Shown piece by piece: positions 30,101-64,000 of a DNA stretch of 64,000 nucleotides. Position numbers and translations under genes: made by a program. The stretch comes from Octopus sinensis. Lineage: Eukaryota. The stretch's first letter is position 1; each line of letters begins with the position of its first letter. Location of the stretch: positions 16,864,001-16,928,000 of the forward strand of contig NC_043025.1 of assembly GCF_006345805.1 (NCBI RefSeq), read 5' to 3'. The notes beneath the pieces are model-generated. The model was not told where the DNA came from, ran no database searches, and worked only from the letters and a program-made list of their open reading frames with translations.

Positions 30101-30639
30101 TTTTTTTTATTTTTTAAGTAAACATTTGAAATATTTTGACATTTTCTAACCTGAAAACTTTTGAGAATTTAGTTGTCTCTTGGATAAATATAAGCTCATT
30201 ATCACTCATATAGCTTATATTTACCTAAGAGATCACAAAATTTTATTTTGTTTTTCAAGTACACATTTGAAATATTTTGAGATTTTCTAACATGAAAACT
30301 TTTGAGAATTTAGTGATCTCTTGGATAAATACTAGCTTATTTTCACTCAGTCAACTTATCACCTTACAGATCACAAATTTTTTTTTTATTTTTCTAGTAC
30401 ACATTTGTAATATTTTGACATTTTGTAACCTGAAAACTTTTGAGAATTTAGTGATCTCTTGGAAAATATAAGCTTATTATCACTCATATAGCTTATATTT
30501 ACCTACGAGATCAGAAAATTTTTTTTTTTCAAGTACACATTTGAAATATTTTGACATTTTCTAACCTGAAAACTTTTGAGAATTTAGTGATCTCTTGGAT
30601 AAATATATGTTTATTATCATCATTCATATAGCTTATATT

Positions 30640-33600: not shown

Positions 33601-34370
33601 TTTTTGTTTTCAAGTACACATTTGAAATATTTTGACATTTTCTAACCTGAAATCTTTTGAGAATTTAGTGATCTCTTGGATAAATATAAGCTTATTATTA
33701 CTCATATAGCTAATATTTACCTAACACATCACAAAATCTTTTTTTTTTTCAAGTACTCATTTGAAATATCTTGACATTTTCTAACCTGAAACCTTTGAGA
33801 ATTTAGTGATCTCTTGGATAAATATGAGCTTATTATCACTCATATAACTAATATTTACCTAACAGATCACGAAATTTTTTTTTGTTTTTCAAGTACACAT
33901 TTGAAATATTTTGACATTTTCTAACCTGAAAACTTTTGAGAATTTAGCGATCTCTTGTATAAATATAAGCTTATTATCATCACTCATATCGCTTATATTT
34001 ACCTAACAGATCACAAATTTTTTTTTTTTTTCAAATACACATTTGAAATATTTTGACATTTTCTAACCTGAAATCTTTTGAGAATTTTGTGGTCTCTTGG
34101 ATAAATATAAGCTTATTATCACTCATATAGCTTATATTTACCAAAGAGATCACCAAATTTTTTTTTGTTTTTCAAGTACACATTTGAAATATTTTGACAT
34201 TTTCTAACCTGAAAACTTTTGAGAATTTTGTGATCTCTTGGATAAATTCAAGCTTATTATCATCACACATATAGCTTATTTTTACCTAACAGATCACAAA
34301 ATTTTTTTTTTATTTTTCAAGTACACATTTGAAATATTTTGACATTTTCTAACCTGAAAACTTTTGAAAA
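30640..34370 (-). repeat. ~14-mer higher-order repeat (~1.96 kb), two copies
   Basis: GCTCTCTTGGATAGAT occurs at 30733 and 32690, CGAGTACACATTTGTAATG at 31364 and 33330, and TCACACATAT at 32291 and 34263. Confidence 0.87.
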
Positions 34371-40085: not shown

Positions 40086-40427
40086 GTGATAATAAAAAGG
40101 TAAAGACCGCCTTCGGTCATGAGTGACCATGGGTGTGCACCTAGAGATTTACCCTTTGAGGCACAAGTCTGGGCATGGTCGTTTTTTATGGAAGACCAGT
40201 AGACGCCAATGCATAACGGCCTCCCCTCTCCACGCCACCTGTGTTATCCAAGGGAAAGACAAAGGTCGATACAGCTTGGCACCTGTGACGTCGCAACTCA
40301 TTTCTACAGCTGAGTGAACTGGAGCAACGTGAAATAAAGTGTCTTGCTCAAGAACACAACACGCAGCCCGGTCCAGGATTCGAGCTAACAACCTCACGAT
40401 CGTAAGCTCGACGCTCTGTGATAATAA
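40086..40427 (-). repeat. Target-site duplication GTGATAATAA (reverse complement TTATTATCAC) flanking SINE copy 2 (40086-40095 and 40418-40427)
   Basis: ACTGA[GTGATAATAA]aaagg...acgctct[GTGATAATAA]GTTTAT. Confidence 0.93.
40096..40417 (-). mobile_element. 5'-truncated tRNA-derived CORE-type SINE, copy 2 (322 bp)
   Basis: Its reverse complement aligns end to end with copy 1 with no indels and 18 substitutions (by-eye count, ~94% identity). It has the same 5' end (AGAGCG) and 3' end (CCTTT). Confidence 0.85.
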
Positions 40428-43400: not shown

Positions 43401-46400
43401 TCAGGTTAGAAAATGTCAAAATATTTCAAATGTGTACTTGAAAACAAAAAAGATTTCGTGATCTGTTTAAGTTAATATATGTTATATGAGAGATAATATG
43501 CTTATAATTATCTAAGAGATCACTAAATTCTCAAAAGTTTTCAGGTTAGAAATGTCAAAATATTTCAAATGTGTCTACTGAAAAACAAAAGAAAATCTTT
43601 TTATCTATTAGGTAAATATAAGCTATATAAGTGATAATAAGCTTATATTTATCCAAGAGATCACTAAATTCTCAAATGTTTTCAGGTTAGAAAATGTCAA
43701 GATATGTCAAATGAGTACTTGAAAAAAAAAAAATTTTTGATCTGTTAGGTAAATATTAGCTATTTGAGTGATAATAAGCTTATATTTATCCAAGAGATCA
43801 CTAAATTCTCAAAAGATTTCAGGTTAGAAAATGTCAAAATATTTCAAATGTGTACTTGAAAACAAAAAAAAATTAGTGATCTATTAGGTAATTATAAGTT
43901 AACTGAGTGATAATAAGCTTATATTTATCTAAGAGATCACTAAATTCTTAAAAGTTTTCAGGTTAGAAAATGTCAAAATATTTTAAATGTTTACTTCAAA
44001 AACAAAAAAAAATTTTGTGATCTGTGAGGTGATCAGTTAACTGAGTGATATTAAGCTTATATTTATCCAAGTGATCACTAAATTCTCAAACGTTTTCAGG
44101 TTAGAAAATGTCAAAATATTTCAAATGTGTACTTGAAAAACAGAAAAAAAATTTTTGATCTGTTAGGTAAATATATATATACTGAATTATAATAAGCTTA
44201 TATTTATCCAAGAGATCACAAAATTCTCAAAATTTTTCGGGTTAGAAAATGTCAAAATATTTTAAATGTGTACTTGAATAACAAAAAAAATTTTGTGGTC
44301 TGTTAGGTATATATAAGTTAACTGAGTGATAATAAGCTTATATTTATCCAAGAGATCACTAAATTCTCAAAAGTTTTCAGGTTAGAAAATGTCAAAATAT
44401 TTCAAATGTGTACTTGAAAACAAAAAAAAAATTACGTGATCTGTTAAGTAAATATAAGTTAATGAGTGTAATATGCTTATATTATCTAAGAGATCACTAA
44501 ATTCTCAAAAGTTTTCAGGTTAGAAATGTCAAAATATTTCAAATGTGTACTTGAAAAAACAAAAAAATTTTGTGATCTGTTAGGTAAATATAAGCTATAT
44601 GGGTGATAATAAGCTTATATTATCCAAGATATCACTAAATTATCAAAAGTTTTCTGGTTAGCTCAATTATCAAAATATTTCAAATGTTAATGAAAAAAAA
44701 CAAAAAAAATTTTGTTATCTGTTAGGAATATAAGCTATATGAGTGACAATATATTAAGCTCATATTTTTCCAAGAGATCACTAATTCTCAAACGTTTTCA
44801 GGTTAGAAATTGTCAAAATATTTCAATCTGTACTTGAAAACAAAAAAAATTTTGTGATCTGTTAGGTAAATATAAGCTATATGAGTGATAATAAGCTCAT
44901 ATTATCCAAGAGATCACTAAATTCTCAAATGTTTTCAGGTTAGAAAATGTCAAATTATTTCAAATGTGTACTTCAAAAAAAAAAAATTTTGTGTCTCTGT
45001 AGGTAAATAAAGCTATATGAGTGATAATAAGCATATATTTATCCAAGAGATCACTAAAATCTCAAAAGTTTTCATGTTAGAAAATCTCAAAATATTTCAA
45101 ATGTGTACTTGAAAAACAAAATAAAATTTTGTGATCTCGTAGGTAAATATAAGTTATATGAGTGATAATAAGCTTATATTTATCAAAGAGATCACTACAT
45201 TCGCAAAAGATTTCAGGTTAGAAAATGTCAAAATATTTCAAATGTGTACTTAAAAAAAAAAAAAAATTTTGTGACATGTTAGGTAATATAAGCTATATGA
45301 GTGATAATAAGCTTATATTTATCCAAGAGATCACTAAATTCTCAAAAGTTTTCAGGTTAGAAAATGTCAAATATTTCAAATGTGTACTTGAAAAACAAAA
45401 CAAAATTTCGTGGAAAACTATATGAGTGATAATAAGCTTATATTTATACAAAGATCACTAAATTCTCAAAAGTTTTCAGGTTAAAATGTCAAAATATTTC
45501 AAATGGATACTTGAAAAAAAAAAAATTTTTTTTCACCTGTTAGGTAAATATAAGTTAACTGAGAGATAATAAGCTTATATTTATCCAAGAGATAACTAAG
45601 TTCAAAAAAGTTTTCAGGTTAGAAAATGTCAAAATATTTCAAATGTGTACTTGAAAAAAAAAATTATAATTTTCTGATCCCTTAGGGAAATATAAGCTAT
45701 ATGAGTGATAATAAGCTTATATTTTTCCAAGAGGTCACTAAATTCTCAAAAGTTTTCAGGTCAGAAAATATCAAAATATTTCAAATGTGTACTTGAAAAA
45801 CACAAAAAAATTTTATGATCTGTTATCTAGATAAACATAAGTTAACTGAGTGATAATAAGCTTATATTTATCGTAGAGATCACTAAATTCTCAAAAGTTT
45901 TCAGGTTAGAAAATGTCAAAAAATTTCAAATGTGTACTTGAAAAACAAAAAAAAAATTTGTGATCTGTAAGGTGATAAGTGAACTTAGGATAATAAGCTT
46001 AAATTTATCGAAGAGATCACTAATTCTCAAAAGTTTTCAGGTTAGAAACTGTCAAAATATTTCAAATGTTGTACTTGAAAACAAAAAAATTTTGTGATCT
46101 GTTAGGTAAATATAAGCTATTGAGTGTAATAAGCTTATATTTATCGAAGAGATCACTAAATTCTCAAAAGTTTTCAGGTTAGAAAATGTCAAAATTTTCA
46201 TCAATGTGTACTGACAAAAAAAAAAAAAATTTTGTGTGATCCCTTAGGTAATTTAACCTATATGAGTGATAATAAGCTTATATTAATCCAAGAGATCACT
46301 AAATTCTCAAAAGTTTTCAGGTCAGAAAATATCGAAATGTTTCAAATGTGTCCTTGAAAAACAGAAAAAAAATTTTATGATCTTTTAGATAAACATAAGC

Positions 46401-47389
46401 TATATGAGTGATAATAAGCTTATATTTATCCAGAGATCGCTAAATTCTCAAAAGTTATCTTCACGTAGAAAATGTCAAAATATTTCAAATGTGTACTTGA
46501 AAAGAAAAAAAAATTTCGTGATTTGTTACGTAAATATATGTTAACTGAGTGAAAATATGTTATATTTTAGCAAGATCACTAAATTCTCAAAAGTTTTCAG
46601 GTCAGAAAATATCCAATATTTCAATGTGTACTTGAAAAACAGAAAACACTTTTATGATCTCTATCTAGTAAATAAGTTAATGAGTGATAATAAGCTTATA
46701 TTATCAAAGAGATCACTAAATTCTCAAAAGTTTTCAGGTTAGAAAATGTCAAAATATTTCAAATGTGTTACTTGAAAACAAAAAAAAATTTTGTTAATCT
46801 GTGAGGTAAATATAAGTATATGAGTGATATAAGCTAATATTATCCAAGAGATCACTGAATTCTCAGATGTTTTAGGTAGAAAATGTCAAATATTTCAAAT
46901 GTGTACTTGAAATACAAATAAAAAGTCTTGTGATAAACTATATTGAGGGATAATAAGCTATATTTATCCAAGAGATCACTAATTCTCAAAGTTTTCAGGT
47001 TAGAGATGTCAAAATATTTCAATCTGTACACTACCAAAAAAAATTTGTGATCTGTGAGGTTAGTAAGCTATATGAGTGATAATAACTTTAATTTATCCAA
47101 GAGATCGTTATTCTCAAAAGTTTTCAGGTTAGAAAATGTCAAAATATTTCAAATGTGTACTTGAAAAAATAAACAAAATTTGTTATTGTGTAAGGTGACA
47201 AGTTGACTGAGTGATAATAAGCATATTTATCCAAGAGATCACTAAATTCTCAAAAGTTTTCAGTTAGAAAAAGAAAATGTCAAAATATTTCAAATGTTTA
47301 CTTGAATAAAAAAAAAAATTTTGTGATCTTAGGTAAATATAAGCTATATGAGTGATAATAGCTTATATTTATCCAAGAGACCACTAAAT

Positions 47390-50160
47390 TCTCAAACGTT
47401 TTCAGGTCAGAAAATGTCAAAAATTTTAAATATGTAGTTGTAAAATAAAATAAAAATTTGTGATCTGTTAGGTAAATATAAGCTAATGAATGATGATAAT
47501 AAGCTTATATTTATCCAAGAGATCACTAAATTCTCAAAAGTTTTCAGGTAGAAAATGTCAAAATATTTCAAATGTGTGCTTGAAAACAAAAAAAATTTTG
47601 TGATCCGTTAGGTAAATATAAGCTATATGAGTGATAATAAGCTTATATTTATCCAAGAGATCGCTAAATTCTCAAAATATTTCACGTTAGAAAATGTCAA
47701 AATATTTCAAAAGTGTACTTAAAAAGAAAAAAAATTTCGTGATTTGTTACGTAAATATATGTTAACAGAGTGAAAATATGCTTATATTTATCTAAGAGAT
47801 CACTAAATTCTCAAAAGTTTTCAGGTTAGAAAATGTCAAATTATTTCAAATATGTACTTGAAAAACAGAAAAAAATTTTATGATCTCTTATCTAGATAAA
47901 CATAAGTTAACTGAGTGATAATAAGCTTATATTTATCGAAGAGATCACTAAATTCTCAAAAGTTTTCAGGTTAGAAAATGTCAAAATTTTTCAAATGTGT
48001 ACTTGAAAAACAAAAAAAAAATTTGTGATCTGTAAGGTGATAAGTTAACTTAGTGATAATAAGCTTATATTATCGAAAGATCACTAAATTCTCAAAAGTT
48101 TTCAGGTTAGAAAATGTCAAAATATTTCAAATGTGTACTTGAAAAACAAAAAAAAATTTTGTGATCTGTTAGGTAAATATAAGTTAACTGAGTGATAATA
48201 AGCTTATATTTATCCAAGAGATCACTAAATCCTCAAAAGTTTTCAGGTTACAAAATGTCAAAATATTTCAAATGTGTACTTGAAAAAAAAAAAAATTTTG
48301 TGATCTGTTAGTCAAATATTTCAAATAGTTCAAATGTCAAAATATTTCAAATGTGTACTTGAAAAATAAAAAAAAATTTTGTGATCTGTTAGGTAAATAT
48401 AAGCTATATGAGTGATAATAAGATGATATTTATCAAAGAGATCACTAAATTCTCAAAAGTTTTCAGGTTAGAAGACGTCAAAATATTTCAAATGTGTTCT
48501 TGAAAAAAAAAAAAAATTTTGGTGATCCCTTAGGTAAATTTAAGCTAAAAGAGTGATAATAAGCTTATATTTATCCAAGAGATCACTAAATTCTCAAAAG
48601 TTTTCAGGTCAGAATATATCCAAATATTTCAAAAGTGTCCTTGAAAAACAGAAAAAAATTTTAAGCTCTGTTAGATAAACATAAGTTAACTGAGTGATAA
48701 TAAGCTTATATTTATCGAAGAGATCACTAAATTCTCAAAAGTTTTCAGGTTAGAAAATGTCAAAATATTTCAAATGTGTACTTGAAAAACAAAAAAAAAT
48801 TTTGTGTGATCCGTAGGTAAATATAGCTATATGAGTGATAATAGCTTATATTTATCCAAGAGATCGCTAAATTCTCAAAATATTTCAGGTTAGAAAATGT
48901 CAAAATATTTCAAATGTGTACTTGAAAAACAAAAAAAAAATTTCTGATCTGTAAGGTGATAAGTTAACTTAATGATAATAAGCTTATATTTATCCAAGAG
49001 ATCACTAAATTCTCAAAAGCTTTCAGGTTAGAAAATGTCAAAATATTTCGAAAGTGTACTCGAAAAACAAAAAAGTTTTGTGATCTGTTAGGCAAATATT
49101 TGAAATATTTCAAATGTCAAAATATTTCAAATGTGTAGTTGAAAAAAAAAAATTTTGTGAGCTGTTAGGCAAATATAAGTTAACTGAATGATAATAAGCT
49201 TTTATTTATCCAAGAGATCACTAAATTCTTAAAAGTTTTCAGGTTAGAAAATGTCAAAATATTTCAAATGTGTACTTGAATAAGAAAAAAAAATTTTGTT
49301 ACCTGTTAGGTAAATATAAGCTATATGAGTGATAATAAGCTTATATTTATCGAAGAGATCACAAAATTCTCAAACGTTTTCAGGTCAGAAAATGTCAAAA
49401 TATTTCAAATATGTAGTTGTAAAATAAAATAAAAATTTGTGATCTGTTAGGTAAATATAAGCTATATGAATGATGATAATAAGCTTATATTTATCCAAGA
49501 GATCACTAAATTCTCAAAAGTTTTCAGGTTAGAAAATGTCAAAATATTTCAAATGTGTACTTGAAAAACAAAAAAAAATTTTGTGATCCGTTAGGTAAAT
49601 ATAAGCTATATGAGTGATAATAAGCTTATATTTATGCAAGAGATCACTAAATTCTCAAAAGTTTTCAGGTCAGAAAATATCCAAATATTTCAAATGTGTA
49701 CTTGAAAAACAGAAAAAAATTTTATGATCTCTTATCTAGTTAAACATAAGTTAACTGAGTGATAATAAGCTTATATTTATCGAAGAGATCACTAAATTCT
49801 CAAAAGTTTTCAGGTTCGAAAATGTCAAAATATTTCAAATGTGTACTTGAAAAACAAAAAAAAAATTTGTGATCTGTAAGGTGATAAGTTAACTTAGTGA
49901 TAATAAGCTTATATTTATCGAAGAGATCACTAAATTCTCAAAAGTTTTCAGGTTAGAAAATGTCAAAATATTTCAAATGTGTACTTGAAAAACAAAAAAA
50001 AATTTTGTGATCTGTTAGGTAAATATAAGTTAACTGAGTGATAATAAGCTTATATTTATCCAACAGATCACTAAATCCTCAAAAGTTTTCAGGTTACAAA
50101 ATGTCAAAATATTTCAAATGTGTACTTGAAAAAAAAAAAATTTTGTGATCTGTTAGGTAA
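47390..50160 (+). repeat. Imperfect duplication (47.4-48.3 kb vs 49.4-50.2 kb, offset ~1.98 kb) with a one-monomer indel
   Basis: ATGTAGTTGTAAAATAAAATAAAAATTTG occurs at 47432 and 49411; TGATCTCTTATCTAG occurs at ~47881 and ~49726. Confidence 0.7.
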
Positions 50161-50899
50161 ATATAAGCTATATGAGTGATAATAAGCTTATATTTATCGA
50201 AGAGATCACTAAATTCTCAAAAGTTTTCAGGTTAGAAAATGTCACAATATTTCAAATGTGTACTTGAAAAAAAAAAAAAAATTTCTGATCTGTAAGGTGA
50301 TAAGTTAACTTAATGATAATAAGCTTATATTTATCCAAGAGATCACTGAATTCTCGAAAGCTTTCAGGTTAGAAAATGTCAAAATATTTCGAAAGTGTAC
50401 TCGAAAAGCAAAAAAATTTTGTGATCTGTTAGGCAAATATTTGAAATATTTCAAATGTCAAAATATTTCAAATGTGTACTTGAAAAAAAAAAATTTTGTG
50501 ATCTGTTAGGCAAATATAAGTTAACTGAATGATAATGAGCTTATATTTATCCAAGAGATCACTAAATTCTTAAAAGTTTTCAGGTTAGAAAATGTCAAAA
50601 TATTTCAAATGTGTACTTGAATAAGAAAAAAAAAATTTGTTAACTGTTAGGTAAATATAAGCTATATGAGTGATAATAAGCTTATATTTATCGAAGAGAT
50701 CACTAAATTCTCAAAAGTTTTCAGGTTAGAAAATGTCAAAATATTTCAAATGTGTACTTGAAAAACAAAAAAAAATTTTGTGATCTATTAGGTAAATATA
50801 AGCTATATGATTGATAATAAGCTTATATTTCTCCAAGAGATCACTAAATTCTCAAAAGTTTTCAGATTACAAAATGAAAAAATATTTCAAATGTGTACT

Positions 50900-52270
50900 T
50901 GAAAAACAAAAAAAAAATTTGTGATCTGTTAGATAAATATAAGCTATATGAGTGATAATAAGCTTATATTTATCTAAGAGATCACTAAATTCTCAAAAGT
51001 TTTCAGGTTAGAAAATGTCAAGATATTTCAAATGTGTACTTGAAAGACAGAAGGAAATTTTGTGATCTGTTAGATAAATATAAGTTAACTGAGTGATAAT
51101 AAGCTTATATTTATCTAAGAGATCACTAAATTCTCAAAAGTTTTCAGGTCAGAAAATGTCAAAATATTTCAAAAGTTTATTTGAAACACAAAAAAATGTT
51201 TGTTATCTGTGAGTTAAATATAAGTTATATGAGTGATAATAAGCTAATATTTATCCAAGAGATCACTGAATTCTCAAATGTTTTTAGGTAGAAAATGTCA
51301 AAATATTTCAAATGTGTACTTGAAATAGAAAAGAAAATCTTGTGATAAACTATATGAGTGTAATAAGCTTATATTTATCCAAGAGATCACTATATTCTCA
51401 AGAGTTTTCAGTTAGAAAATGTCAAAATATTTCAAATGTGTACTCTAAAAACCAAAAAAAATTTCTGATCTCTTAGGTATATAAAAGCTATATGAGTGAT
51501 AATAAGCTTATATTTATCCAAGCGATCACTAAATTCTCAAAAGTTTTCAGGTTAGAAAATGTGAAAATATTCAAATGTGTACTTGAAAAACAAAAAAAAA
51601 TTTGTGATCTGTTAGATAAATATAAGCTATATGAGTGATAATAAGCTTATATTTATCAAGAGATCACTAAATTCTCAAAAGTTTTCAGGTTAGAAAATGT
51701 CAAGATATTTCAAATGTGTACTTGAAAGACAGAAGGAAATTTTGTGATCTGTTAGATAAATATAAGTTAACTGAGTGATAATAAGCTTATATTTATCTAA
51801 GAGATCACTAAATTCTCAAAAGTTTTCAGGTCAGAAAATGTCAAAATATTTCAAAAGTTTATTTGAAAAACAAAAAAAATGTTTGTTATCTGTGAGTTAA
51901 ATATAAGTTATATGAGTGATAATAAGCTAATATTTATCCAAGAGATCACTGAATTCTCAAATGTTTTTAGGTAGAAAATGTCAAAATATTTCAAATGTGT
52001 ACTTGAAATAGAAAAGAAAATCTTGTGATAAACTATATGAGTGTTAATAAGCTTATATTTATCCAAGAGATCACTATATTCTCAAGAGTTTTCAGGTTAG
52101 AAAATGTCAAAATATTTCAAATGTGTACTCTAAAAACCAAAAAAAATTTCTGATCTCTTAGGTATATAAAAGCTATATGAGTGATAATAAGCTTATATTT
52201 ATCCAAGCGATCACTAAATTCTCAAAAGTTTTCAGGTTAGAAAATGTGAAAATATTTCAAATGTGTACTT
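50900..52270 (+). repeat. Pentamer tandem duplication (~682 bp)
   Basis: AGATATTTCAAATGTGTACTTGAAAGACAGAAGGAAAT occurs at 51021 and 51703, followed by an identical series of variants. Confidence 0.88.
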
Positions 52271-53027
52271 GAGAAACCAAAAAAAATTTTGAGATCTGTT
52301 CGGTAATTATAAGCTATATGAGTGATAATACGCTTATATTTGTCCAAGAGATCACAAAATTCTCAAAAGTTTTCAAGTGAGAAAATGTCAAAATATTTCA
52401 AATGTGTATTTGAAAAAGAAAAAAAAATTTTGTGATCTGTTAGGTAAATATAAGCTATATGAGTGATAATAATATGCTTATATTTATCCAAGAGATCGCT
52501 AAATTCTCAAAAGTTTTCAGGTTAGAAAATGTCAAAATATTTCAAATGCGTACTTGAAAAAAAAAAAAAAATTTGTGATATGTTAGGTATATATAAGCTA
52601 TATGAGTAAAAATAAGCTCATATTTATCGAAGAGATCACTAATTTCTCAAAAGTTTTCAGGTTAGAAAATGTCAAAATATTTCAAATGTGTACTTGAAAA
52701 AAAAAAAAAATTTTTTTGTTCTGTTAGGCAAATATATATTATCTGAATGATAATAAGCTTATATTTATCCAAGAGATCACTAAATTCTCAAAAGTTTTCA
52801 GGATACAAAATTTCAGAATATTTAAAATGTGTACTTGAAAAACAAAAAAAAATTTTGTGATCTTTTACGTAAATATAAGCTATATGAGTGATAATAAGCT
52901 TATATTAATCGAAGAGATCACTAAATACTCAAAATTTTTCAGGTTAGAAAATGTCAAAATATTTCAAATGTGTACTTGAAAAACAAAAAAAAATTTTGTG
53001 ATCTGTTAGGTATTTTGACATTTTCTA

Positions 53028-53700
53028 CCTAAAAACATCTGAGAATTCAGTGATCTCTTATAAGTGATAGCTTATATTTACCTAACAGATCACAAAATTT
53101 TTTTTTGTTTTTCAAGTACACATTTGAAATATTTTGACGTTTTCTAACCTGAAAACATTTGAGAATGTAGTTATCTCTTGGATAAATATAAGCTTATTAT
53201 CACACATATAGCTTATATTTAAGTAACAGATCACAAAATTTTTTTTTGTTTTTCAAGTACACATCTGAAATATTTTGATATTTTCTAACCTTAAAACGTT
53301 TGAGAATTTAGTGATCTCTTGGATAAATATAAGCTTATTATCACTCAGCTAACTTATATTTATCTAAAAACATCTGAGAATTCAGTGATCTCTTATAAGT
53401 GATAGCTTATATTTACCTAACAGATCAGAAAATTTTTTTTTATTTTCAAGTACACATTTGAAATATTTTGACGTTTTCTAACCTGAAAACATTTGAGAAT
53501 GTAGTTATCTCTTGGATAAATATAAGCTTATTATCACACATATAGCTTATATTTACCTAACAGATCAGAAATTTTTTTTCGTTTTTCAAGTTCACATCTG
53601 AAATATTTTGATATTTTCTAACCTGAAAACGTTTGAGAATTTAGTGATCTCTTGGATAAATATAAGCTTATTATCACTCAGCTAACTTATATTTATCTAA
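53028..53700 (-). repeat. 335-bp tandem duplication carrying the aberrant junction monomer
   Basis: CATCTGAGAATTCAGTGATCTCTTATAAGTGATAGC occurs at 53036 and 53371, each followed by GACGTTTT...GAATGTAGTTATC...TCACACATAT. Confidence 0.88.
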
Positions 53701-54929
53701 CAGATCACAAAATTTTTTTGTATTTTTCAAGTACACATTTGAAATATTTTGACATTTTCTAAACAGACAACTTTTAAGAATTTAGTGATCTCTTGGATAA
53801 ATATAAGCTTATTATCACTGAGCTAACTTATATTTATCTAACAGATCACAAAATTTTTTTTTGTTTTTCAAGTACACATTTGAAATATTTTGACATTTTC
53901 TCACCTGAAAACTTTTGAGACTTTAGTGATCAGTTGGAAAATATAAGCTTATTATCACTCATATAGTATATATTCACCTACGAGATCACAAAATTTTTTT
54001 TTTTTTCAAGTACACATTTGAAATATTTTGACAATTTCCAACCTGAATAATTTTGAGAATTTTGTGATCTCTTGGATAAATATAAGCTTATTATCATTCA
54101 TATAGCTTATATTTACCTAAGAGATAACAAATTTTTTTTTTATTTTTCAAGTACACATTTGAAATATTTTGACATTTTCTAACCTGAAAACTTTTAAGAA
54201 TTTAGTGGTCTCTTGGATACATATAAGCTTATTATCACTCAGTTAATTTATATTTACATAACAAATCACAAAATTTTTTTTTATTTTTGAAGTACACATG
54301 TGAAATATTTTGACATTTTCTAACCTGAAAACTTTTGAGAATTTATTGTCTCTTGGATAACTATAAGCTTATTATCACTCATATAGCTTATTCTTACCTA
54401 ACGGATCACGAAATTTTTTTTTTTATTCAAGTACACATTTGGAATATTTTGACATTTTCTAACCTGAAAACTTTTGAGAATTTAGTGATATCTTGGATAA
54501 ATATAAGCTTATTATCATCACTCATATAGCTTATATTTACCTAAAAGACCGCAAATTTTTTTTTTTTTTTCAAGTACACATTTGAAATATTTTGACATTT
54601 TCTAACCTGAAAACTTTTGAGAATTTAGTGGTCTCTTGGAAAAATATAAGCTTATTATCACTCATATACCTTATATTTACCTAAGAGATCATAAAATTTT
54701 ATTTTGTTTTTCATGTACACATTTGAAATATTTTGAGATTTTCTAACAGGAAAAATTTTGAGAATTTAGTGATCTCTTGGATAAATATTAGCTTATTATC
54801 ACTCAGTTAACTTATCACCATACAGATCACAAATTTTTTTTTAGTTTTTCTAGTACACATTTGAAATAATTTGACATTTTCTAACCTGAAAACTTTTGAG
54901 AATTTAGTGATCTCTTGGATACATATAAG

Positions 54930-57900
54930 CTTATTATCACTCAGCTAATCTATATTTACCTAAGAAATCACAAAATTTTTTTTTTATTATTGAAGTACAC
55001 GTGTGAAACATTTTGACATTTTCTAACCTGAAAACTTTTGAGAATTTAGTGATCTCTTGGATAACTATAAGCTTATTATCACTCATATAGCTTATATTTA
55101 CCTAACAGATCACAAATTTGTTTTTTTATTCAAGTACACATTTGAAATATTTTGACATTTTCTAACCTGAAAACTTTTGAGAATTTAGTGATATCTTGGA
55201 TAAATATAAGCTTATTATCATCACTCATATAGCTTATATTTACCTACCAAATCACAAAATTTTTTTTTTGTGTTTCAAGTACACATTGAAATACTTAGAG
55301 ATTTTCTAACCCGAAACCTTTGAGAATTTAGTGATCTCTTGGATAAATATAAGCTTATTATCATCACTCATATAGCATATTTTTACCTAAAACATCGCAA
55401 ATTTTTTTTTATTTTTCAAGTAAACATTTGAAATAATTTGACATTTTCTAACCTGAAAAATTTTGAGAATTTAGTTATCTCTTGGATAAATATAAGCTTA
55501 TCATCACTCATATAGCTTATATTTACCTAACACATCACAAATTTTTTTTTTGTTTTTCAAGTACACATCTGAAATATTTTGACATTTTCTAACCTGAAAA
55601 CTTTTGAGAATTTAGTGATCTCTTGGACAAATATAAGCTTATTATCACTCATATAGCTTATATTTACCTAACAGATCACAAATTTTTTTTTTGTTTTTCA
55701 AGTACACATCTGAAATATTTTGATATTTTCTAACCTGAAAACTTTTCAGAATTTAGTGATCACTTGGATAAATATAAGCTTATTATCACTCAGCTAACTT
55801 ATATTTATCTAACAGATCACAAAATTTTTTTGTATTTTTCAAGTACACATTTGAAATATTTTGACATTTCTAACCTGAAAACTTTTGAGAATTAGTGATC
55901 TCTTGGTCAAATATAAGCTTATTATCACTCATAATAGCTTATATTTACCTAAGAGATCACAAAATTTTTTTTTGATTTTCAAGTACACATCTGAAATATT
56001 TTGATATTTTCTAACCTGAAAACTTTTGAGAATTTAGTGATCTCTTGGATAAATATAAGCTTATTATCACTCAGCTAACTTATATTTATCTAACAGATCA
56101 CAAAATTTTTTTTTGTTTTTCAAGTACACATTTGAAATAATTTGACATTTTCTCACCTGAAAACTTTTGAGACTTTAGTGATCAGTTGGAAAATATAAGC
56201 TTATTATCACTCATATAGCTTATATTTACCTACGAGATCAGAAAATTTTTTTTTTTTTTTAAGTACACATTTGAAATATTTTGACATTTTCTAACCTGAA
56301 AACTTTTGAGAATTTAGTGATCTCTTGGATACATATAAGCTTATTATCACTCATATAGCTTATATTTACCTAACCGATCACAAAATTTTTTTTTGTTTTT
56401 CAGGTACACATTTGAAATATTTTGACAATTTCCAACCTGAAAACTTTTGAGAATTTAGTGATCTCTTGGATAAATATAAGCTTATTATCACTCATATAGC
56501 TTATATTTACCTAACAGATCACAACATTTTTTTTTGTTTTTCAAGTACACATTTGAAATATTTTGACATTTTCTAACCTGAAAACTTTTGAGACTTTAGT
56601 GATCTCTTGGATAAATATAAGATTATTATCATTCAGTTAATTTATATTTACCTAACAGATCACAAATTTTTTTTCTATTTTTCAAGTACACATTTGAAAT
56701 ATTTTGACATTTTCTAACCTGAAAACTTTTGAGAATTTAGTGATCTCTTGGACAAATATAAGCTTATTATCACTCATATAGCTTATATTTACCTAACAGA
56801 ACACAAATTTTTTTTTTGTTTTTCAAGTACACATCTGAAATATTTTGATGTTTTCTAACCTGAAAACTTTTGAGAATTTAGTGATCTCTTGGATAAATAT
56901 AAGCTTATTATCACTCAGCTAACTTATATTTATCTAACAGATCACAAAATTTTTTTCTATTTTTCAAGTACACATTTGAAATATTTTGATATTTTCTAAC
57001 CTGAAAAGTTTTAAGAATTTAGTGATCTCTTGGATAAATATAAGCTTATTATCACTCAGCTAATCTATATTTACCTAACAAATCACAAAATTTTTTTTTT
57101 ATTATTGAAGTACACGTGTGAAACATTTTGACATTTTCTAACCTGAAAACTTTTGAGAATTTAGTGATCTCTTGGAAACTATAAGCTTATTATCACTCAT
57201 ATAGCTTATATTTACCTAACAGATCACAAATTTTTTTTTTTTTCAAGTACACATTGAAATAATTTGACATTTTCTAACCTGAAAACTTTTGAGAATTTAG
57301 TGATATCTTGGATAAATATAAGCTTATTATCATCACTCATATAGCTTATATTTACCTACCAAATCACAAAATTTTTTTTTGTGTTTCAAGTACACATTTG
57401 AAATACTTAGAGATTTTCTAACCCGAAAACCTTTGAGAATTTAGTGATCTCTTGGATAAATATAAGCTTATTATCATCACTCATATAGCATATTTTTACC
57501 TAAAACATCGCAAATTTTTTTTTTATGTTTCAAGTAAACATTTGAAATAATTTGACATTTTCTAACCTGAAAAATTTTGAGAATTTAGTTATCTCTTGGA
57601 TAAATATAAGCATATTATCACTCATATAGCTTATATTTACCTAACACATCACAAATTTTTTTTTTGTTTTCAAGTAACATCTGAAATATTTTGACATTTT
57701 CTAACCTGAAAACTTTTGAGAATTTAGTGATCTCTTGGACAAATATAAGCTTATTATCACTCATATAGCTTATATTTACCTAACAGATCACAAATTTTTT
57801 TTTGTTTTTCAAGTACACATCTGAAATATTTTGATATTTTCTACCTGAAAACTTTTTTCAGAATTTAGTGATCACTTGGATATATAAGCTTATTATCACT

Positions 57901-60900
57901 CAGCAACTTATATTTATCTAACAGATCACAAAATTTTTTTGTATTTTTCAAGTACACATTTGAAATATTTTGACATTTTCTAACCTGAAAACTTTTGAGA
58001 ATTTAGTGATCTCTTGGTCAAATATAAGCTTATTATCACTCATATAGCTTATATTTACCTAAGAGATCACAAAATTTTTTTTTGATTTTCAAGTACACAT
58101 CTGAAATATTTTGATATTTTCTAACCTGAAAACTTTTGAGAATTTAGTGATCTCTTGGATAAATATAAGCTTATTATCACTCAGCTAACTTATATTTATC
58201 TAACAGATCACAAAATTTTTTTTTGTTTTTCAAGTACACATTTGAAATAATTTGACATTTTCTCACCTGAAAACTTCTGAGACTTTAGTGATCAGTTGGA
58301 AAATATAAGCTTATTATCACTCATATAGCTTATATTTACCTACGAGATCAGAAAATTTTTTTTTTTTTTTTCAGTACACATTTGAAATATTTTGACATTT
58401 TCTAACCTGAAAACTTTTGAGAATTTAGTGATCTCTTGGATACATATAAGCTTATTATCACTCATATAGCTTATATTTACTTCACCGATCACAAAATTTT
58501 TTTTTGTTTTTCAGGTACACATTTGAAATATTTTGACAATTTCCAACCTGAAAACTTTTGAGAATTTAGTGATCTCTTGGATAAATATAAGCTATTATCA
58601 CTCATATAGCTTATATTTACCTAACAGATCACAACATTTTTTTTTGTTTTTCAAGTACACATTTGAAATATTTTGACATTTTCTAACCTGAAAACTTTTG
58701 AGACTTTAGTGATCTCTTGGAAAATATAAGATATTATCATTCAGTTAATTTATATTTACCTAACAGATCACAAATTTTTTTTCTATTTTTCAAGTACACA
58801 TTTGAAATATTTTGACATTTTCTAACCTGAAAACTTTTGAGAATTTAGTGATCTCTTGGACAAATATAAGCTTATTATCACTCATATAGCTTATTTTACC
58901 TAACAGAACACAAATTTTTTTTTGTTTTTCAAGTACACATCTGAAATATTTTGATGTTTTCTAACCTGAAAACTTTTGAGAATTTAGTGATCTCTTGGAT
59001 AAATATAAGCTTATTATCACTTAGCTAACTTATATTTATCTAACAGATCACAAAATTTTTTTCTATTTTTCAAGTACACATTTGAAATATTTTGATATTT
59101 TCTAACCTGAAAAGTTTTAAGAATTTAGTGATCTCTTGGATAAATATAAGCTTATTATCACTCATATAGCTTATATTTACCTAACAAATCACAAAATTTT
59201 TTTTTGTTTTTCAAGTACACATTTGAAATATTTTGACATTTTCTAACCTGGAAACTTTTGAGAATTTAGTGATCTCTTGGAAAATATAAGCTTATTATCA
59301 CTCATATAGCTTATATTTACCTACGAGATTACAAAATTTTTTTTTTTTCAAATACACATTTGAAATATTTTGATAATTTCTGATCTTAAAACTTTTGAGA
59401 ATTTAGTGATCTCTTGGATAAATATAAGCTTATTATCACTCAGCTAACTTATATTTATCTAACAGATCACAAAATTTTTTTTTATTTTTCAAGTACACAT
59501 TTGAAATATTTTGACGTTTTCTAACCTGAAAACTTTTAAGAATTTAGTGATCTCTTGGATAAATATAAGCTTATTATCACTCAGCTAACTTATATTTATC
59601 TAACAGATCACAAAATTTTTTTTTGTTTTTCAAGTACACATTTGAAATATTTTGACATTTTCTCACCTGAAAACTTTTGAGAATTTAGTGATCAGTTGGA
59701 AAATATAAGCATATTATCACTCATTTAGCTTATATTTACCTACGAGATCACAAAATTTTTTTTTTGTTTTAAGTACACATTTGAAATATTTTGACATTTT
59801 CTAACCTGAAAACTTTTGAGAATTTAGTGATCTCTTGGATTACTATAAGCTTATTATCACTCATATAGCTTATATTTACCTAACAGATCACAAATTTGTT
59901 TTTTTATTCAAGTACACATCTGAAATATTTTGACATTTTCTAACCTGAAAACTTTTGAGAATTTAGTGATATCTTGGATAAATATAAGCTTATTATCATC
60001 ACTCATATAGCTTATATTTACCTAACAAATCACAAAATTTTTTTTTGTGTTTCAAGTACACATTTGCAATACTTAGAGATTTTCTAACCCGAAAACCTTT
60101 GAGAATTTAGTGATCTCTTGGATAAATATAAGCTTATTATCATCACTCATATAGCATATTTTTACCTAAAACATCGCAAATTTTTTTTTTATTTTTCAAG
60201 TAAACATTTGAAATAATTTGACATTTTCTAACCTGAAAAATTTTCAGAATTTAGTTATCTCTTGGATAAATATAAGCTTCTTATCACTCATATAGCTTAT
60301 ATTTACCTAACAGATCACAAATTTTTTTTTTGTTTTTCAAGTACACATCTGAAATATTTTGACATTTTCTAACCTGAAAACTTTTGAGAATTTAGTGATC
60401 TCTTGGACAAATGTAAGCTTATTATCACTCATATAGCTTATATTTACCTAACAGATCACAAATTTTTTTTTGTTTTTCAAGTACACATCTGAAATATTTT
60501 GATATTTTCTAAACTGAAAACTTTTCAGAATTTAGTGATCTCTTGGATAAATATAAGCTTATTATCACTCAGCTAACTTATATTTATCTAACAGATCACA
60601 AAATTTTTTGTATTTTTCAAGTACACATTTGAAATATTTTGACATTTTCTAACCTGAAAACTTTTGAGAATTTAGTGATCTCTTGGTCAAATATAGCTTA
60701 TTATCACTCATATAGCTTATATTTACCTAAGAGATCACAAAATTTTTTTTGATTTTCAAGTACACATCTGAAATATTGATATTTTCTAACCTGAAAACTT
60801 TTGAGAATTTAGTGATCTCTTGGATAAATATAAGCTTATTATCACTCAGCTTATATTTATCTAACAGATCACAAATTTTTTTTGTTTTTCAAATACACAT

Positions 60901-61750
60901 TGAAATAATTTGACATTTTCTCAACCTGAAAACTCTTGAGACTTTAGTGATCAGTTGGAAAATATAAGCTTATTATCACTCATATAGCTTATATTTACCT
61001 AGGAGATCAGAAAATTTTTTTTTGTTTTTCAGTACACATTTGAAATATTTTGACATTTTCTAACCTGAAAACTTTTGAGAATTATAGTGATCTCTTGGAT
61101 ACATATAAGCTTATTATCACTCATATAGCTTATATTTACTTAACGATCACAAAATTTTTTTTGTTTTTCAGGTACACATTTGAAATATTTTGACAATTTC
61201 CACCTGAAAACTTTTGAGAATTTAGTGATCTCTTGGATAAATATAAGCTTATTATCACTCATATAGCTTATATTTACCTAACAGATCACAAATTTTTTTT
61301 GTTTTTCAAGTACACATTGAAATATTTTGACATTTTCTAACCTGAAAACTTTTGAGATTTAGTGATCTCTTGGATAAATATAAGCTTATTATCATTCAGT
61401 TAATTTATATTTACCTAACAGATCACAAATTTTTTTTCTATTTTTCAAGTACACATTTGAAATATTTTGACATTTTCTAACCTGAAAACTTTTGAGAATT
61501 TAGTGATCTCTTGGACAAATATAAGCTTATTATCACTCATAAAGCTTATATTTACCCAACAGAACACAAATTTTTTTTTTGTTTTTCAAGTACACATCTG
61601 AAATATTTTGATGTTTTCTAACCTGAAAACTTTTGAGAATTTAGTGATCTCTTGGATAAATATAAGCTTATTATCACTCAGCTAACTTATATTTATCTAA
61701 CAGATCAAAAAATTTTTTTGTATTTTTCAAGTACACGTTTGAAATATTTT
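54930..61750 (-). repeat. 15-mer higher-order repeat (~2.11 kb), two adjacent copies plus a third copy offset by ~2.66 kb
   Basis: TGAAGTACACGTGTGAAACA occurs at 54991 and 57106 (2115 bp = 15 x 141). CTTAGAGATTTTCTAACCCG occurs at 55294, 57406 and 60072; AGAACACAAA at 56798, 58905 and 61561. Confidence 0.88.
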
Positions 61751-62320
61751 GACATTTTCTAAACTGAAAACTTTTGAGAATTTAGTGATCTCTTGGACAA
61801 ATATAAGCTTATTATCACTCATATAGCTTATATTTACTAACAACAAATCACAAAATTTTTTTTTCAAGTACACATTTGAAATATTTGACATTTTCTAACT
61901 GAAAACTTTGAGATTTAGTGATCTCTTTGGATAAATATAAGCTTATTATCACTCATATAGCTATATTTACCTACGAGATTACAAATTTTTTTTTTTTTTT
62001 TTTATACACATTTGAAATATTTTGATATTTCTCTAACCTTAACTTTTGAGAATTTAGTGATCTCTTGGATAAATATAAGCTTATTATCACTCATATAGCT
62101 TATATTTATAACAGATCACAAGATTTTTTTTTGTGTTTCAAGTACACATTTGAAAATTTTGACAATTTCTCACCTGAAAACTTTTGAGAATTTAGTGATC
62201 GTTGGATAAATATAAGCTTATTATCACTCATATAGCTTATATTTACACGAGTCACAAATTTTTTTCTTTTAAGTACACATTTGAAAAATTTTGACATTTT
62301 CTAACCTGAAAACTTTTGAG

Positions 62321-62397
62321 AATTTAGTGATCTCTTGGATAAATATAAGCTTATTATCACTCATATAGCTTATATTTACCTAACAGATCACAAAATT
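62321..62397. repeat. Representative internal inverted repeat of the monomer (31-bp arms, 15-nt loop), present in essentially every full-length monomer
   Basis: Arm 62321-62351 AATTTAGTGATCTCTTGGATAAATATAAGCT vs the reverse complement of arm 62367-62397 (AATTTTGTGATCTGTTAGGTAAATATAAGCT) match at 27/31 positions. The loop is TATTATCACTCATAT. Confidence 0.95.
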
Positions 62398-64000
62398 TTT
62401 TTTTGTTTTCAGGTACACATTTGAAATATTTTGACATTTTCTAACCTGAAAACTTTTGAGAATTTAGTGATCTCTTGGATAAATATAGCTTATTATCACT
62501 CATATAGCTTTATATTTACTTAGACAAATCCAAAATTTTTTTCTATTTTCAAGTACACATTTGAAAATTTTGACATTTTCTAACCTGAAAATTTGAGAAT
62601 TTAGTGATCTCTTGGAAAATATAAGCTTATTATCACTCATATAGCTTATATTTACCTACGAGATACAAAATTTTTTTTTTTTTCAAGTACACATTTGAAA
62701 TATTTGACATTTTCTAATCTAAAACTTTTGAGAATTTAGTGATCTCTTGGATAAATATAAGCTTATTATCACTCATATAGCTTATATTACCTAACAGATC
62801 ACAAATTTTTTTTGTTTTTCAAGTACACATTGAAATATTTTGACATTTTCTAACCTGAAAACGTTTGAGAATTTAGTGATCTCTTGGATAAATATAAGCT
62901 TATTTCACTCAGCTACTTATATTTATCTAACAGACCACAAAATTTTTTTTGTTTTCAAGTACACATTGAAATATTTTGACATTTTCTAACCTGAAAACTT
63001 TTGAGAATTTAGTGATTCTCTTGGAAAATATAAGCTTATTATCACTCATATAGCTTATATTTACCTAACAGATCAGATAATTTTTTTTTTTTTAAGTACA
63101 CATTTGAAATATTTTGACATTTCTAACCTGAAAACTTTTGAGAATTTAGTGATTCTTGGATAAATATAAGCTTATTATCACTCATATAGCTTATATTTAC
63201 CTAACGATCACAAAATTTTTTTGTTTTTCAGGTACACATTTGAAATATTTTGACAATTTCCAACCTGAAAACTTTTGAGAATTTAGTGATCTCTTGGATA
63301 AATATAAGCTTATTATCACTCATATAGCTTATATTTACCTAACAAATCACAAAATTTTTTTTTGTTTTTCAGGTACACATTTGAAATATTTTGACAATTT
63401 CCAACCTGGAAACTTTTGAGAATTTAGTGATCTTTTGGAAAATATAAGCTTATTATCACTCATATAGCTTATATTTACCTACGAGATTACAAAATTTTTT
63501 TTTTTTTTCAAATACACATTTGAAATATTTTGATATTTTCTAATCTAAAAACTTTTGAGAATTTAGTGATCTCTTGGATAAATATAAGCTTATTATCACT
63601 CAGTTAATTTATATTTACCTAACAGATCACAATTTTTTTTTTATTTTCAAGTACACATTTGAAATATTTTTACATTTTTAACCTGAAATTTTGAGAATTT
63701 AGTGATCTCTTGGATAAATATAAGCTATTATCACTCATATAGCTTATATTACCTAACAGATCACAAAATTTTTTTTTGTTTTTCAAGTACACATTTGAAA
63801 TATTTTGACATTTTCTCACCTGAAAACTTTTGAGATTTAGTGATCTTGGATAAATATAAGCTTATTATCACTCATATAGCTTATATTTACCTACAGATCA
63901 CAAATTTTTTTTTTTTTCAAGTACACATTTGAAATATTTGACATTTCTAACCTGAAAACTTTTAGAATTTAGTGATCTCTTGGATAAATATAAGCTTATA

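What the first reader, a model, noticed from the sequence alone, without database searches (positions are those of the whole stretch)
62321..62397. Every satellite monomer carries a 31-bp quasi-palindrome (hairpin/cruciform-capable) with a 15-nt loop
Seen: over half of each 141-bp unit is a 77-bp imperfect inverted repeat (27/31 matches in the later subfamily, 26/31 in the early one), so the window holds several hundred regularly spaced potential hairpins. Established: AT-rich inverted repeats can extrude cruciforms and stall replication, and dyad symmetry/non-B DNA has been proposed as a feature of centromeric satellites. Inference: this stem-loop organises how the array mutates (see the separate findings on junctions, arm conversion, deletion and the SINE site). 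It is the best candidate here for an undescribed system: a self-restructuring satellite rather than a coding locus.
Basis: partly seen in the sequence, partly recalled or inferred. Interest (0 to 1): 0.7.

Follow-up and report, generated by a model that had tools for sequence, protein, structure and literature searches.

The report
Hairpin-capable inverted repeat in satellite DNA
The 64-kb window is one AT-rich ~141-bp satellite array whose repeat unit really does contain a 77-bp imperfect inverted repeat, but this is an inherited, slowly decaying feature of a well-known kind that leaves only local marks on how the array mutates.

Summary
At 62321-62397 a 31-nt arm, a 15-nt spacer and a 31-nt arm pair at 27/31 positions. 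The same dyad is in the consensus of both subfamilies (27/31 and 26/31). It beats all 5000 dinucleotide shuffles and folds as single-stranded DNA at -15.1 kcal/mol (z = -7).

- **Decay:** individual copies pair less well than the consensus (mean 22.2 of 30 scored pairs).
- **No extra constraint:** the arms are not better conserved than the rest of the unit.
- **No maintenance:** compensatory changes are no commoner than in shuffled or slid controls, there are no arm-to-arm conversion tracts, and no full-length monomer has a flipped loop.
- **Large rearrangements:** deletions and duplications of 15 bp or more join at 2-8-nt direct microhomologies spread evenly along the unit (11 of 23 breakpoints in the palindrome; 12.6 expected).

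Real footprints:
- One of three orientation switches is a seamless chimeric arm.
- The other two share a rare arm variant.
- Indels of 3-16 bp are enriched in the loop.
- One SINE-like insertion also sits in the loop.

Satellites with dyad symmetry inside the monomer, and arrays with inverted sub-blocks, are already described (for example in Tribolium). This is a new member of a known kind; species unidentified.

The parts
1..64000 (.). One AT-rich (24% GC) tandem satellite, unit ~141 bp. 470 monomer hits, with local higher-order repeats, two subfamilies, and only one ORF of 90 aa or more in the whole window.
62321..62351 (+). Left arm of the example palindrome (model columns 60-90): AATTTAGTGATCTCTTGGATAAATATAAGCT.
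62352..62366 (+). 15-nt spacer or loop, TATTATCACTCATAT (model columns 91-105). The minimum-energy fold closes 3 further pairs, leaving an 8-nt loop.
62367..62397 (+). Right arm (model columns 106-136), AGCTTATATTTACCTAACAGATCACAAAATT. It is complementary to the left arm at 27/31 positions.
2..6834 (-). Orientation block 0: 50 monomer hits in minus orientation. This is the most diverged block, with the weakest palindromes (19.8-20.8 of 30 pairs).
6839..38514 (+). Orientation block 1: 236 monomer hits in plus orientation.
38522..52985 (-). Orientation block 2: 104 monomer hits in minus orientation.
53011..63999 (+). Orientation block 3: 80 monomer hits in plus orientation, and the most homogeneous block (7.6% mean pairwise divergence).
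6802..6832 (+). Junction A: a single chimeric arm, AGCTTTTATTTATCCAAGAGATCACAAAATT. It follows a reverse-complemented loop and has the reverse-complemented-left-arm bases at three diagnostic positions. It then ends as a right arm and runs into a plus-orientation spacer. The switch lies inside the block shared by both arm types, AGATCAC(A/T)AAATT.
   Evidence: read against the consensus
38498..38528 (+). Junction B. A plus-orientation monomer (left arm, loop) is followed by the reverse complement of a rare left-arm variant with an 8-bp deletion. The sequence then jumps (GATCACTG|TTGTGAT) into a reverse-complemented right arm that carries a 15-bp deletion.
52992..53099 (+). Junction C. A reverse-complemented right arm is cut at about column 115 and joined to plus-orientation non-palindromic sequence at about column 28. 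Next come the same rare 8-bp-deleted left arm (53044-53064), a short TGATA remnant that may be a flipped loop, and a right arm. The segment is duplicated at 53364-53432.
23625..23946 (+). 322-bp SINE-like insert with a 10-bp target-site duplication TTATTATCAC (23615-23624 and 23947-23956). The duplication covers the last base of the left arm and the first 9 nt of the loop.
40096..40417 (-). Second copy of the same insertion (same duplication, same flank variants, 94.3% identical), carried into the minus block by a later rearrangement.

Best explanation
This is an ordinary, non-coding, AT-rich satellite array of roughly nucleosome-sized units, from an unidentified animal genome. Inference: it is probably heterochromatic or (peri)centromeric.

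Its founder monomer contained a 77-bp imperfect inverted repeat. The dyad is present in hundreds of copies because the unit has been amplified and homogenised by unequal exchange and segmental duplication, not because pairing is maintained. In individual copies it decays by ordinary mutation.

When the DNA is single-stranded, for example on the lagging-strand template, each unit can fold into a hairpin of about -9 to -15 kcal/mol. Cruciform extrusion from duplex DNA should be disfavoured by the 15-nt spacer and the 4-5 mismatches (my own knowledge, not tested here).

The detectable consequences are local:
- Because a left arm resembles the reverse complement of a right arm, strand or orientation switches can occur inside the arms. 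These give chimeric arms and blocks of inverted array.
- The loop region is a hot spot for small slippage indels and received one retroposon.

Larger deletions and duplications arise by ordinary microhomology slippage anywhere in the unit.
For: **Shown.**
- Tandem array, with only one ORF of 90 aa or more.
- The dyad is significant in the consensus but weaker in the copies: mean 22.2 of 30 pairs, against 25-26 in the consensus.
- Divergence of the arms (5.5% and 8.6%) is not below that of the non-palindromic part (5.0%).
- Compensatory doubles: 20 in register against 11-37 in slid registers. By the independent tool: 16 cells against 13.6 +/- 2.8 in shuffles and 23-49 in slid registers.
- Pairing alleles within an arm follow independence: right arm 3 observed against 8.2 expected, left arm 4 against 4.4.
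- 0 of 414 loops are inverted.
- Local higher-order repeats and near-identical monomers at offsets of 5-34 units show amplification by segmental duplication.
- The large events join at direct microhomologies (AAA, TTTT, TT, ACATTT, TCA, AA, TTTGA, AT, ATATTT, TACCTAA) and are spread evenly.
- Junction A is a chimeric arm, and junctions B and C share a rare arm variant.
- Indels are enriched in the loop.
- The insertion's target duplication lies in the loop.
- Mirror-register divergence across all three junctions equals the background, which excludes recent fold-back duplication and fold-back read artefacts.

**Inferred.** Chromosomal location, hairpin formation in vivo, and the template-switch or recombination mechanism at the arms.
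Against: - Concerted evolution can hide selection. If whole monomers are replaced by gene conversion or amplification, selection for a good dyad would act on the consensus and need not leave compensatory pairs.
- At the consensus mismatch positions the pairing base is the commonest minor allele in 6 of 9 columns, including two C-to-G transversions. That fits decay from a more perfect ancestor, but equally fits templated quasi-palindrome correction.
- The late subfamily is more palindromic than the early one, and the direction of change cannot be set without an outgroup.
- Only three orientation switches and one insertion are available.
- Assembly errors in satellite DNA cannot be excluded from one window.
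Confidence: 0.7

Rival explanations
1. One reading: the stem-loop actively organises the mutation of the array (junctions, arm conversion, deletions, insertion site), making it a 'self-restructuring satellite'.
For: - Junction A is a seamless arm chimera.
- Junctions B and C carry a shared rare arm variant.
- 5 of 6 primary switch breakpoints lie in arms (P about 0.06).
- The loop is enriched for 3-16-bp indels.
- The insertion's target duplication is in the loop.
- The late subfamily gains one pair through an A-to-G change at column 107.
Against: - 11 of 23 large-event breakpoints lie in the palindrome, against 12.6 expected. All joins are at direct microhomologies and none is symmetric about the hairpin.
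- There are no conversion tracts, no covariation and no loop inversions.
- Loop substitution rate is the same as elsewhere once the two subfamily-diagnostic columns are removed (5.3% against 5.0%).
- The loop indels are mostly gain or loss of tandem TTA, ATC, ATA or TATA units, which the local sequence explains without a hairpin.
- Of the three clustered changes that separate the subfamilies, only one increases complementarity.
Confidence: 0.15
2. The dyad is a functional element under selection: a non-B DNA signal for centromere identity, or a two-fold symmetric binding site for a dimeric protein.
For: - The dyad is highly non-random and present in both subfamilies.
- Dyad symmetries are reported to be enriched in centromeric satellites of many taxa (PMC5889037).
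- The minor alleles at mismatch positions tend to restore pairing.
Against: - The arms are no more conserved than the rest of the unit.
- Individual copies pair less well than the consensus.
- There is no compensatory evolution.
- The location of the array and any binding protein are unknown.
Confidence: 0.1
3. Origin from a mobile element: the arms are the terminal inverted repeats of a MITE or foldback-like element (or a TE-internal repeat) that became tandemised. This concerns origin only and is compatible with the best explanation.
For: - Arms of 31 bp with a short or 63-nt interval have the geometry of a small element with terminal inverted repeats.
- TE-derived satellites are common, for example in bivalves (PMC11136912).
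Against: - No dispersed single copies could be looked for.
- There are no recognisable transposase-family termini or target duplications at the arm ends (read by eye).
- No hits were found in any collection available here.
Confidence: 0.12
4. The inverted repeat is a chance property of low-complexity AT-rich sequence, or the orientation switches are assembly or read artefacts.
For: - AT-rich sequence gives many short chance dyads. The non-palindromic half scores no better than shuffles.
- Satellite arrays are prone to misassembly.
Against: - 0 of 5000 shuffles reach the observed score, and the folding z-score is -7.
- Fold-back read artefacts would give near-identical mirrored flanks, but mirrored divergence is 9-12%, equal to the background.
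Confidence: 0.03

Closest known systems
Tribolium madens TmSat1/TmSat2 satellites: three levels of dyad symmetry (within subunits, within the repeat, and array-level 'macro-dyad' inversions); PMC13081366
   Same: - Abundant satellite with an inverted repeat inside the monomer.
- Arrays broken into sub-blocks of opposite orientation spanning kilobases to tens of kilobases.
- Specific, diverged units at the inversion sites.
- Hairpin or cruciform potential predicted by computation only.
   Different: - Unrelated sequence and a different unit size (141 bp, against ~110-bp-derived 225 and 704 bp).
- Arms of 31 bp, against ~300 bp in TmSat2.
- Only three inversion sites could be seen here, so their conservation cannot be judged.
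- The mirrored blocks here are no more similar to each other than any two monomers.
- Species unknown, and the SINE-like insert gives no taxon.
Centromeric satellites with short dyad symmetries predicted to form non-B DNA (Kasinathan and Henikoff 2018, PMC5889037)
   Same: Dyad symmetry in a tandem satellite unit, proposed to form hairpins or cruciforms.
   Different: - That class is defined by dyads under 10 bp and by centromere location. Here the arms are 31 bp with a 15-nt spacer, and the location is unknown.
- No evidence of constraint on pairing was found.
Satellites with long inverted repeats inside the monomer: Trichogramma brassicae (385-bp unit, 80-bp inverted repeats) and Tribolium brevicornis (1061-bp unit, ~470-bp inverted segments), as cited in PMC13081366
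   Same: A large fraction of the monomer is an imperfect inverted repeat (here 77 of 141 bp).
   Different: Shorter arms.
Rearrangement mediated by inverted repeats, and lagging-strand hairpins at interrupted palindromes (reviewed in PMC12708500)
   Same: It works like this for the orientation switches: short inverted repeats act as substrates for strand or template switching, which gives chimeric repeats at inversion borders.
   Different: - Experimental systems use longer or perfect repeats.
- Here there is only sequence evidence, from three junctions, and no sign of the palindrome-centred deletions typical of those systems.

Membership tests
Satellite DNA (tandem repeat array) | Long head-to-tail array of a unit of about 100-200 bp with copy-to-copy divergence and higher-order repeats | tested here: met
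   TRF periods of 139-142 bp across the whole 64 kb, 470 nhmmer monomer hits, 8-12% mean pairwise divergence, and repeats at offsets of 5-34 units.
Satellite DNA (tandem repeat array) | Non-coding | tested here: met
   There is one ORF of 90 aa or more in six frames, and it lies inside the insert. Rfam gives no gathering-threshold hits and ARAGORN finds no tRNAs.
Dyad-symmetric (non-B-prone) satellites | Inverted repeat in the unit beyond chance expectation | tested here: met
   Score 19 against a maximum of 15 in 5000 shuffles; DNA folding z = -6.96; 81% pairing in register against 28-41% slid.
Dyad-symmetric (non-B-prone) satellites | Structure actually forms (sensitivity to nuclease or chemical probes) and the array is centromeric | not testable with these tools
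   Needs S1, T7 endonuclease I or permanganate probing and centromeric-histone mapping in the source organism.
Conserved structured element (pairing under selection) | Compensatory changes above control level, and stems better conserved than the flanks | tested here: not met
   Compensatory cells: 16 against 13.6 +/- 2.8 in shuffles and 23-49 in slid registers; 20 against 11-37. Arm divergence of 5.5% and 8.6% against 5.0% outside the palindrome.
Macro-dyad satellite arrays (Tribolium type) | Sub-arrays of opposite orientation within one array | tested here: met
   Four blocks (-, +, -, +) of 6.8, 31.7, 14.5 and 11 kb.
Macro-dyad satellite arrays (Tribolium type) | Recurrent, conserved inversion-site sequences | tested here: inconclusive
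   Junctions B and C share a rare arm variant, but only three junctions are available and junction A is different.
Self-correcting quasi-palindrome / arm-to-arm gene conversion | Multi-site tracts that make one arm the exact complement of the other, or flipping of the loop | tested here: not met
   Co-occurrence of pairing alleles is at or below independence. 0 of 414 loops are inverted.
MITE- or foldback-derived satellite | Dispersed solo copies with terminal inverted repeats and target-site duplications | not testable with these tools
   The source genome is not available, and no matches were found in the metagenome, prokaryote-genome or viral collections.
SINE (for the 322-bp insert) | Short non-coding insert with a target-site duplication, a tRNA-like pol III head, and membership of a dispersed multicopy family | tested here: inconclusive
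   - A 10-bp target duplication is present.
- A 35-bp core and a tail motif are shared with a dispersed ~330-bp family at 37 loci of a host-contaminated MAG.
- The head is 5'-truncated and not recognised as tRNA by Rfam or ARAGORN.

The most novel reading that the evidence does not exclude
The inverted repeat inside the monomer is what causes the array-level orientation switches. Any left arm can act as an inverted homologue of any right arm, so template switching or recombination between them flips blocks of array and leaves chimeric arms. That would give a concrete sequence-level mechanism linking the 'repeat-level' and 'array-level' dyad symmetries recently described in satellite-rich genomes.
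Probability: 0.3. Interest if true: 0.5.

Novelty: new member of a known kind. Interest (0 to 1): 0.22.

Why it matters
If the arm-mediated switching holds genome-wide, it would explain how satellite arrays acquire blocks of opposite orientation. That architecture is currently discussed as a possible structural feature of (peri)centromeres. The satellite would also offer a natural data set for measuring how short inverted repeats shape rearrangements in eukaryotic heterochromatin. As it stands, the finding mainly shows that a striking dyad in a satellite consensus need not be under selection for pairing. It is inherited by amplification, it decays in the copies, and it does not direct most mutations.

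Tried and rejected
1. **The whole monomer as an inverted dimer of a ~70-bp unit.** A gapped self-versus-reverse-complement alignment runs through the whole unit. However, the 63-nt non-palindromic part alone scores 16, against 17.6 +/- 4.6 in shuffles. Rejected: the dyad is confined to the 77 bp.
2. **Recent fold-back duplication or read artefact at the junctions.** Mirrored monomer divergence of 0.09-0.12 equals the background at all three junctions. Rejected.
3. **Arm conversion as the origin of the late subfamily.** Only one of the three clustered substitutions (column 107, A to G) increases complementarity. Not supported.
4. **Flipped loop near junction C (53065-53069).** Two readings are about equally parsimonious: inversion plus three deletions, or two deletions plus two substitutions. 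The shared ancestry with junction B favours the flipped reading. Left open.
5. **Identifying the satellite.** Literature searches by description and by sequence strings found nothing. A 20-mer scan of metagenome contigs gave 12 single chance matches with no satellite in them. The genome and viral collections gave none.
6. **Identifying the taxon from the insert.** Only a 35-bp core matches a SINE-like family in eukaryotic contigs binned into a 'Metamycoplasmataceae' MAG. The tools give no way to name that host. Rfam and ARAGORN see no tRNA in either element.
7. **Simple inversion model for junctions A and B.** They are not the two reciprocal products of one arm-by-arm inversion. The chimera types do not match when worked through by hand.

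Full report
**What is in the window.**
- Tandem Repeats Finder reports periods of 139-142 bp over the whole 64 kb, and GC content is 24% throughout.
- A profile built from the unit at 62257-62397 finds 470 non-overlapping monomer hits, 414 of them full length.
- They fall into four orientation blocks: minus 2-6834, plus 6839-38514, minus 38522-52985 and plus 53011-63999. The sign changes of GC and AT skew agree with these blocks.
- The window holds one ORF of 90 aa or more, no Rfam family and no tRNA.
- Near-identical monomers recur at offsets of 5-34 units, and TRF sees dimer (281 bp) and larger periodicities. The array has therefore grown by local segmental duplication.

**The observation.**
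- At 62321-62397 the left arm AATTTAGTGATCTCTTGGATAAATATAAGCT and the reverse complement of the right arm agree at 27/31 positions, around the 15-nt spacer TATTATCACTCATAT.
- In profile coordinates (135 columns) the left arm is columns 60-90, the loop 91-105 and the right arm 106-136.
- Two subfamilies differ at columns 103, 104 and 107: CAGTTAACTT, mostly before about 24 kb, and CATATAGCTT, mostly after. They give 26/31 and 27/31 pairs.
- The consensus inverted-repeat score of 19 exceeds all 5000 dinucleotide shuffles (mean 7.4, maximum 15).
- The 77-mer folds as single-stranded DNA at -15.1 kcal/mol, z = -6.96.
- A sliding 77-nt window over the consensus is most stable exactly over the dyad, and a folded trimer uses the 15-nt-loop pairing in each unit.
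Two caveats apply: 56 hits are truncated or rearranged, and real copies carry on average 22.2 of the 30 scored pairs, with a mean energy of -9.1 kcal/mol.
- The remaining 63 nt of the unit have no significant dyad symmetry.

**Is pairing maintained?** No sign of it was found.
- Column-wise divergence from the consensus is 5.0% in the non-palindromic part, 5.5% in the left arm, 5.3% in the loop without its two diagnostic columns, and 8.6% in the right arm.
- Monomers changed on both sides of a pair number 59, against 60.1 expected. 20 of them are compensatory, against 11-37 when the partner column is slid by 1-3.
- The independent pair-counting tool, on 150 evenly sampled copies, gives 16 compensatory cells. 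Shuffles give 13.6 +/- 2.8 and slid registers give 23-49.
- Bases that would make one arm the exact complement of the other do not co-occur within an arm: right arm 3 monomers with two or more such bases against 8.2 expected, left arm 4 against 4.4.
- No full-length monomer has an inverted loop.
- One ambiguous hint remains. At the consensus mismatch columns the pairing base is the commonest minor allele in 6 of 9 columns. That fits either relics of a more perfect ancestor or templated correction, and no outgroup is available to decide.

**Do structural changes follow the hairpin?** I catalogued every discontinuity between or within monomer hits, read representative sequences, and collapsed copies that share descent.
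- There are eleven distinct deletions or duplications of 15 bp or more. With the insertion site they give 23 breakpoints.
- 11 of the 23 lie in the 77-bp dyad, against 12.6 expected. I tallied this count by hand. An earlier tally that also included the three switch junctions gave 16 of 29, P = 0.55.
- Every join sits in a short direct repeat: AAA, TTTT, TT, ACATTT, TCA, AA, TTTGA, AT, ATATTT or TACCTAA. None is symmetric about the hairpin centre. This is ordinary slippage or microhomology joining.
- Unique indels of 3-16 bp inside otherwise intact monomers behave differently. They are concentrated in the loop (7-9 of about 19, 2.3 expected, P about 0.005 to 0.0001).
- Most of these loop indels are gains or losses of tandem TTA, ATC, ATA or TATA units. 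The local sequence alone could therefore explain them.

**Orientation switches.**
- *Junction A (6802-6832).* This is one arm, preceded by a reverse-complemented loop and followed by a plus-orientation spacer. It carries the reverse-complemented-left-arm bases at three diagnostic positions and the right-arm base at the fourth. The switch therefore lies within the block AGATCAC(A/T)AAATT that the two arm types share. By my rough estimate a random pair of breakpoints would give such a seamless join with probability about 0.003.
- *Junction B (38498-38528).* A normal plus-orientation left arm and loop are followed by the reverse complement of a left arm with an 8-bp deletion. The sequence then jumps into a reverse-complemented right arm.
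- *Junction C (52992-53099).* A reverse-complemented right arm (about column 115) is joined to plus-orientation non-palindromic sequence (about column 28). The same 8-bp-deleted left arm follows, now in plus orientation, and then a right arm.
- *Link between B and C.* The deleted variant (GATCTCTT|ATAAG) occurs only three times in the window: at B, at C, and in a local duplicate of C. The two ends of the minus block are therefore related.
- *Not fold-back products.* Mirrored monomers across the junctions are no more alike than the background. The blocks are thus neither recent fold-back duplications nor fold-back read artefacts.
- The arms are clearly involved in the switches, but with three junctions the statistics are thin: 5 of 6 primary breakpoints lie in arms, P about 0.06.

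**The insert.**
- A 322-bp non-satellite segment lies at 23625-23946 (plus) and again at 40096-40417 (minus).
- Both copies have the same 10-bp target duplication TTATTATCAC and the same flank variants, and they are 94.3% identical to each other. This was one insertion into the loop that was later copied or inverted with its flanks.
- Its central 35 bp and its tail motif match a dispersed ~330-bp SINE-like family at 37 loci of a 'Metamycoplasmataceae' MAG. By their composition and repeats, those contigs are animal host DNA.
- Rfam and ARAGORN do not recognise a tRNA in either element. I therefore call it SINE-like only.

**Comparison with what is known.**
- Dyad symmetry in satellites has been described at several scales. 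Short dyads are enriched in centromeric satellites (PMC5889037).
- Long inverted repeats inside the monomer occur in Trichogramma brassicae, Tribolium brevicornis and T. madens TmSat2. Array-level 'macro-dyad' inversions with characteristic inversion-site units occur in Tribolium (PMC13081366).
- Hairpins at interrupted palindromes on the lagging strand, and instability driven by inverted repeats, are established (PMC12708500).
- The present array has the same kinds of features, with a different sequence and intermediate arm length.
- No matching sequence was found in the literature or in the collections searchable here. Dfam, Repbase and eukaryotic genome databases were not available.

**Verdict.**
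- The palindrome is real and far beyond chance. It is best read as an inherited property of the founder monomer that is propagated by amplification and erodes in the copies.
- It probably contributes to orientation switching, and perhaps to small-indel and insertion targeting at the loop.
- It does not organise substitutions, conversions or the larger deletions and duplications, and it is not a new kind of system.
- Novelty: a new member of a known kind. Interest: low to moderate.

Noticed in passing
L013-L049 (GenBank CBDHHR01, 'MAG: Metamycoplasmataceae bacterium'): 37 loci on more than 30 contigs of this bacterial MAG carry a dispersed ~330-bp tRNA-SINE-like repeat, and the 8 contigs whose composition was checked have 37-52% GC. 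The bin appears to be heavily contaminated with animal host DNA.
   Followed up: partly
window 23625-23946 (+) and 40096-40417 (-): A 322-bp SINE-like insert with a 10-bp target duplication TTATTATCAC in the hairpin loop. The two copies are 94.3% identical and lie in oppositely oriented blocks, so the rearrangement that separated them is younger than the insertion. The only ORF of 90 aa or more in the window lies inside the second copy.
   Followed up: partly
window 38500-38512 (-), 53052-53064 (+), 53387-53399 (+): A left-arm variant with an 8-bp deletion occurs only at the two borders of the minus block (in opposite orientation) and in a local duplicate. This ties junctions B and C to one history that I could not fully reconstruct.
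   Followed up: partly
window 11600-19200; 24963-38056 and 38522-48319; 54900-59000: Higher-order repeats: a ~2.45-kb unit (17-19 monomers, including the same truncated and duplicated monomers each time), a 281-bp dimer periodicity on both sides of junction B, and a 15-monomer repeat with identical monomers in the last block.
   Followed up: partly
window 36840-36949, 37947-38056, 38522-38631, 45415-45519, 46933-47030, 51345-51452, 52028-52137: A right-arm variant with a 15-bp internal deletion (AGTTTAT|CACAAGA) is present in both plus and minus blocks and on both sides of junction B. It therefore predates, or moved with, the orientation change.
   Followed up: no
model columns 94-98 of about 31 monomers between 24.8 and 60.2 kb (e.g. 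24860-24939): A 3-bp tandem duplication ATC in the loop (TTATCATCAC) marks a sub-lineage of the late subfamily and alternates with unmarked units. It is useful as a marker of the dimer higher-order repeat.
   Followed up: no
window 1-8000: The first (minus) block is the most diverged (about 12% pairwise) and has the weakest palindromes (19.8-20.8 of 30 pairs). The last block is the most homogeneous (7.6%) and has the best palindromes (about 23 of 30). This suggests an age gradient along the array.
   Followed up: no
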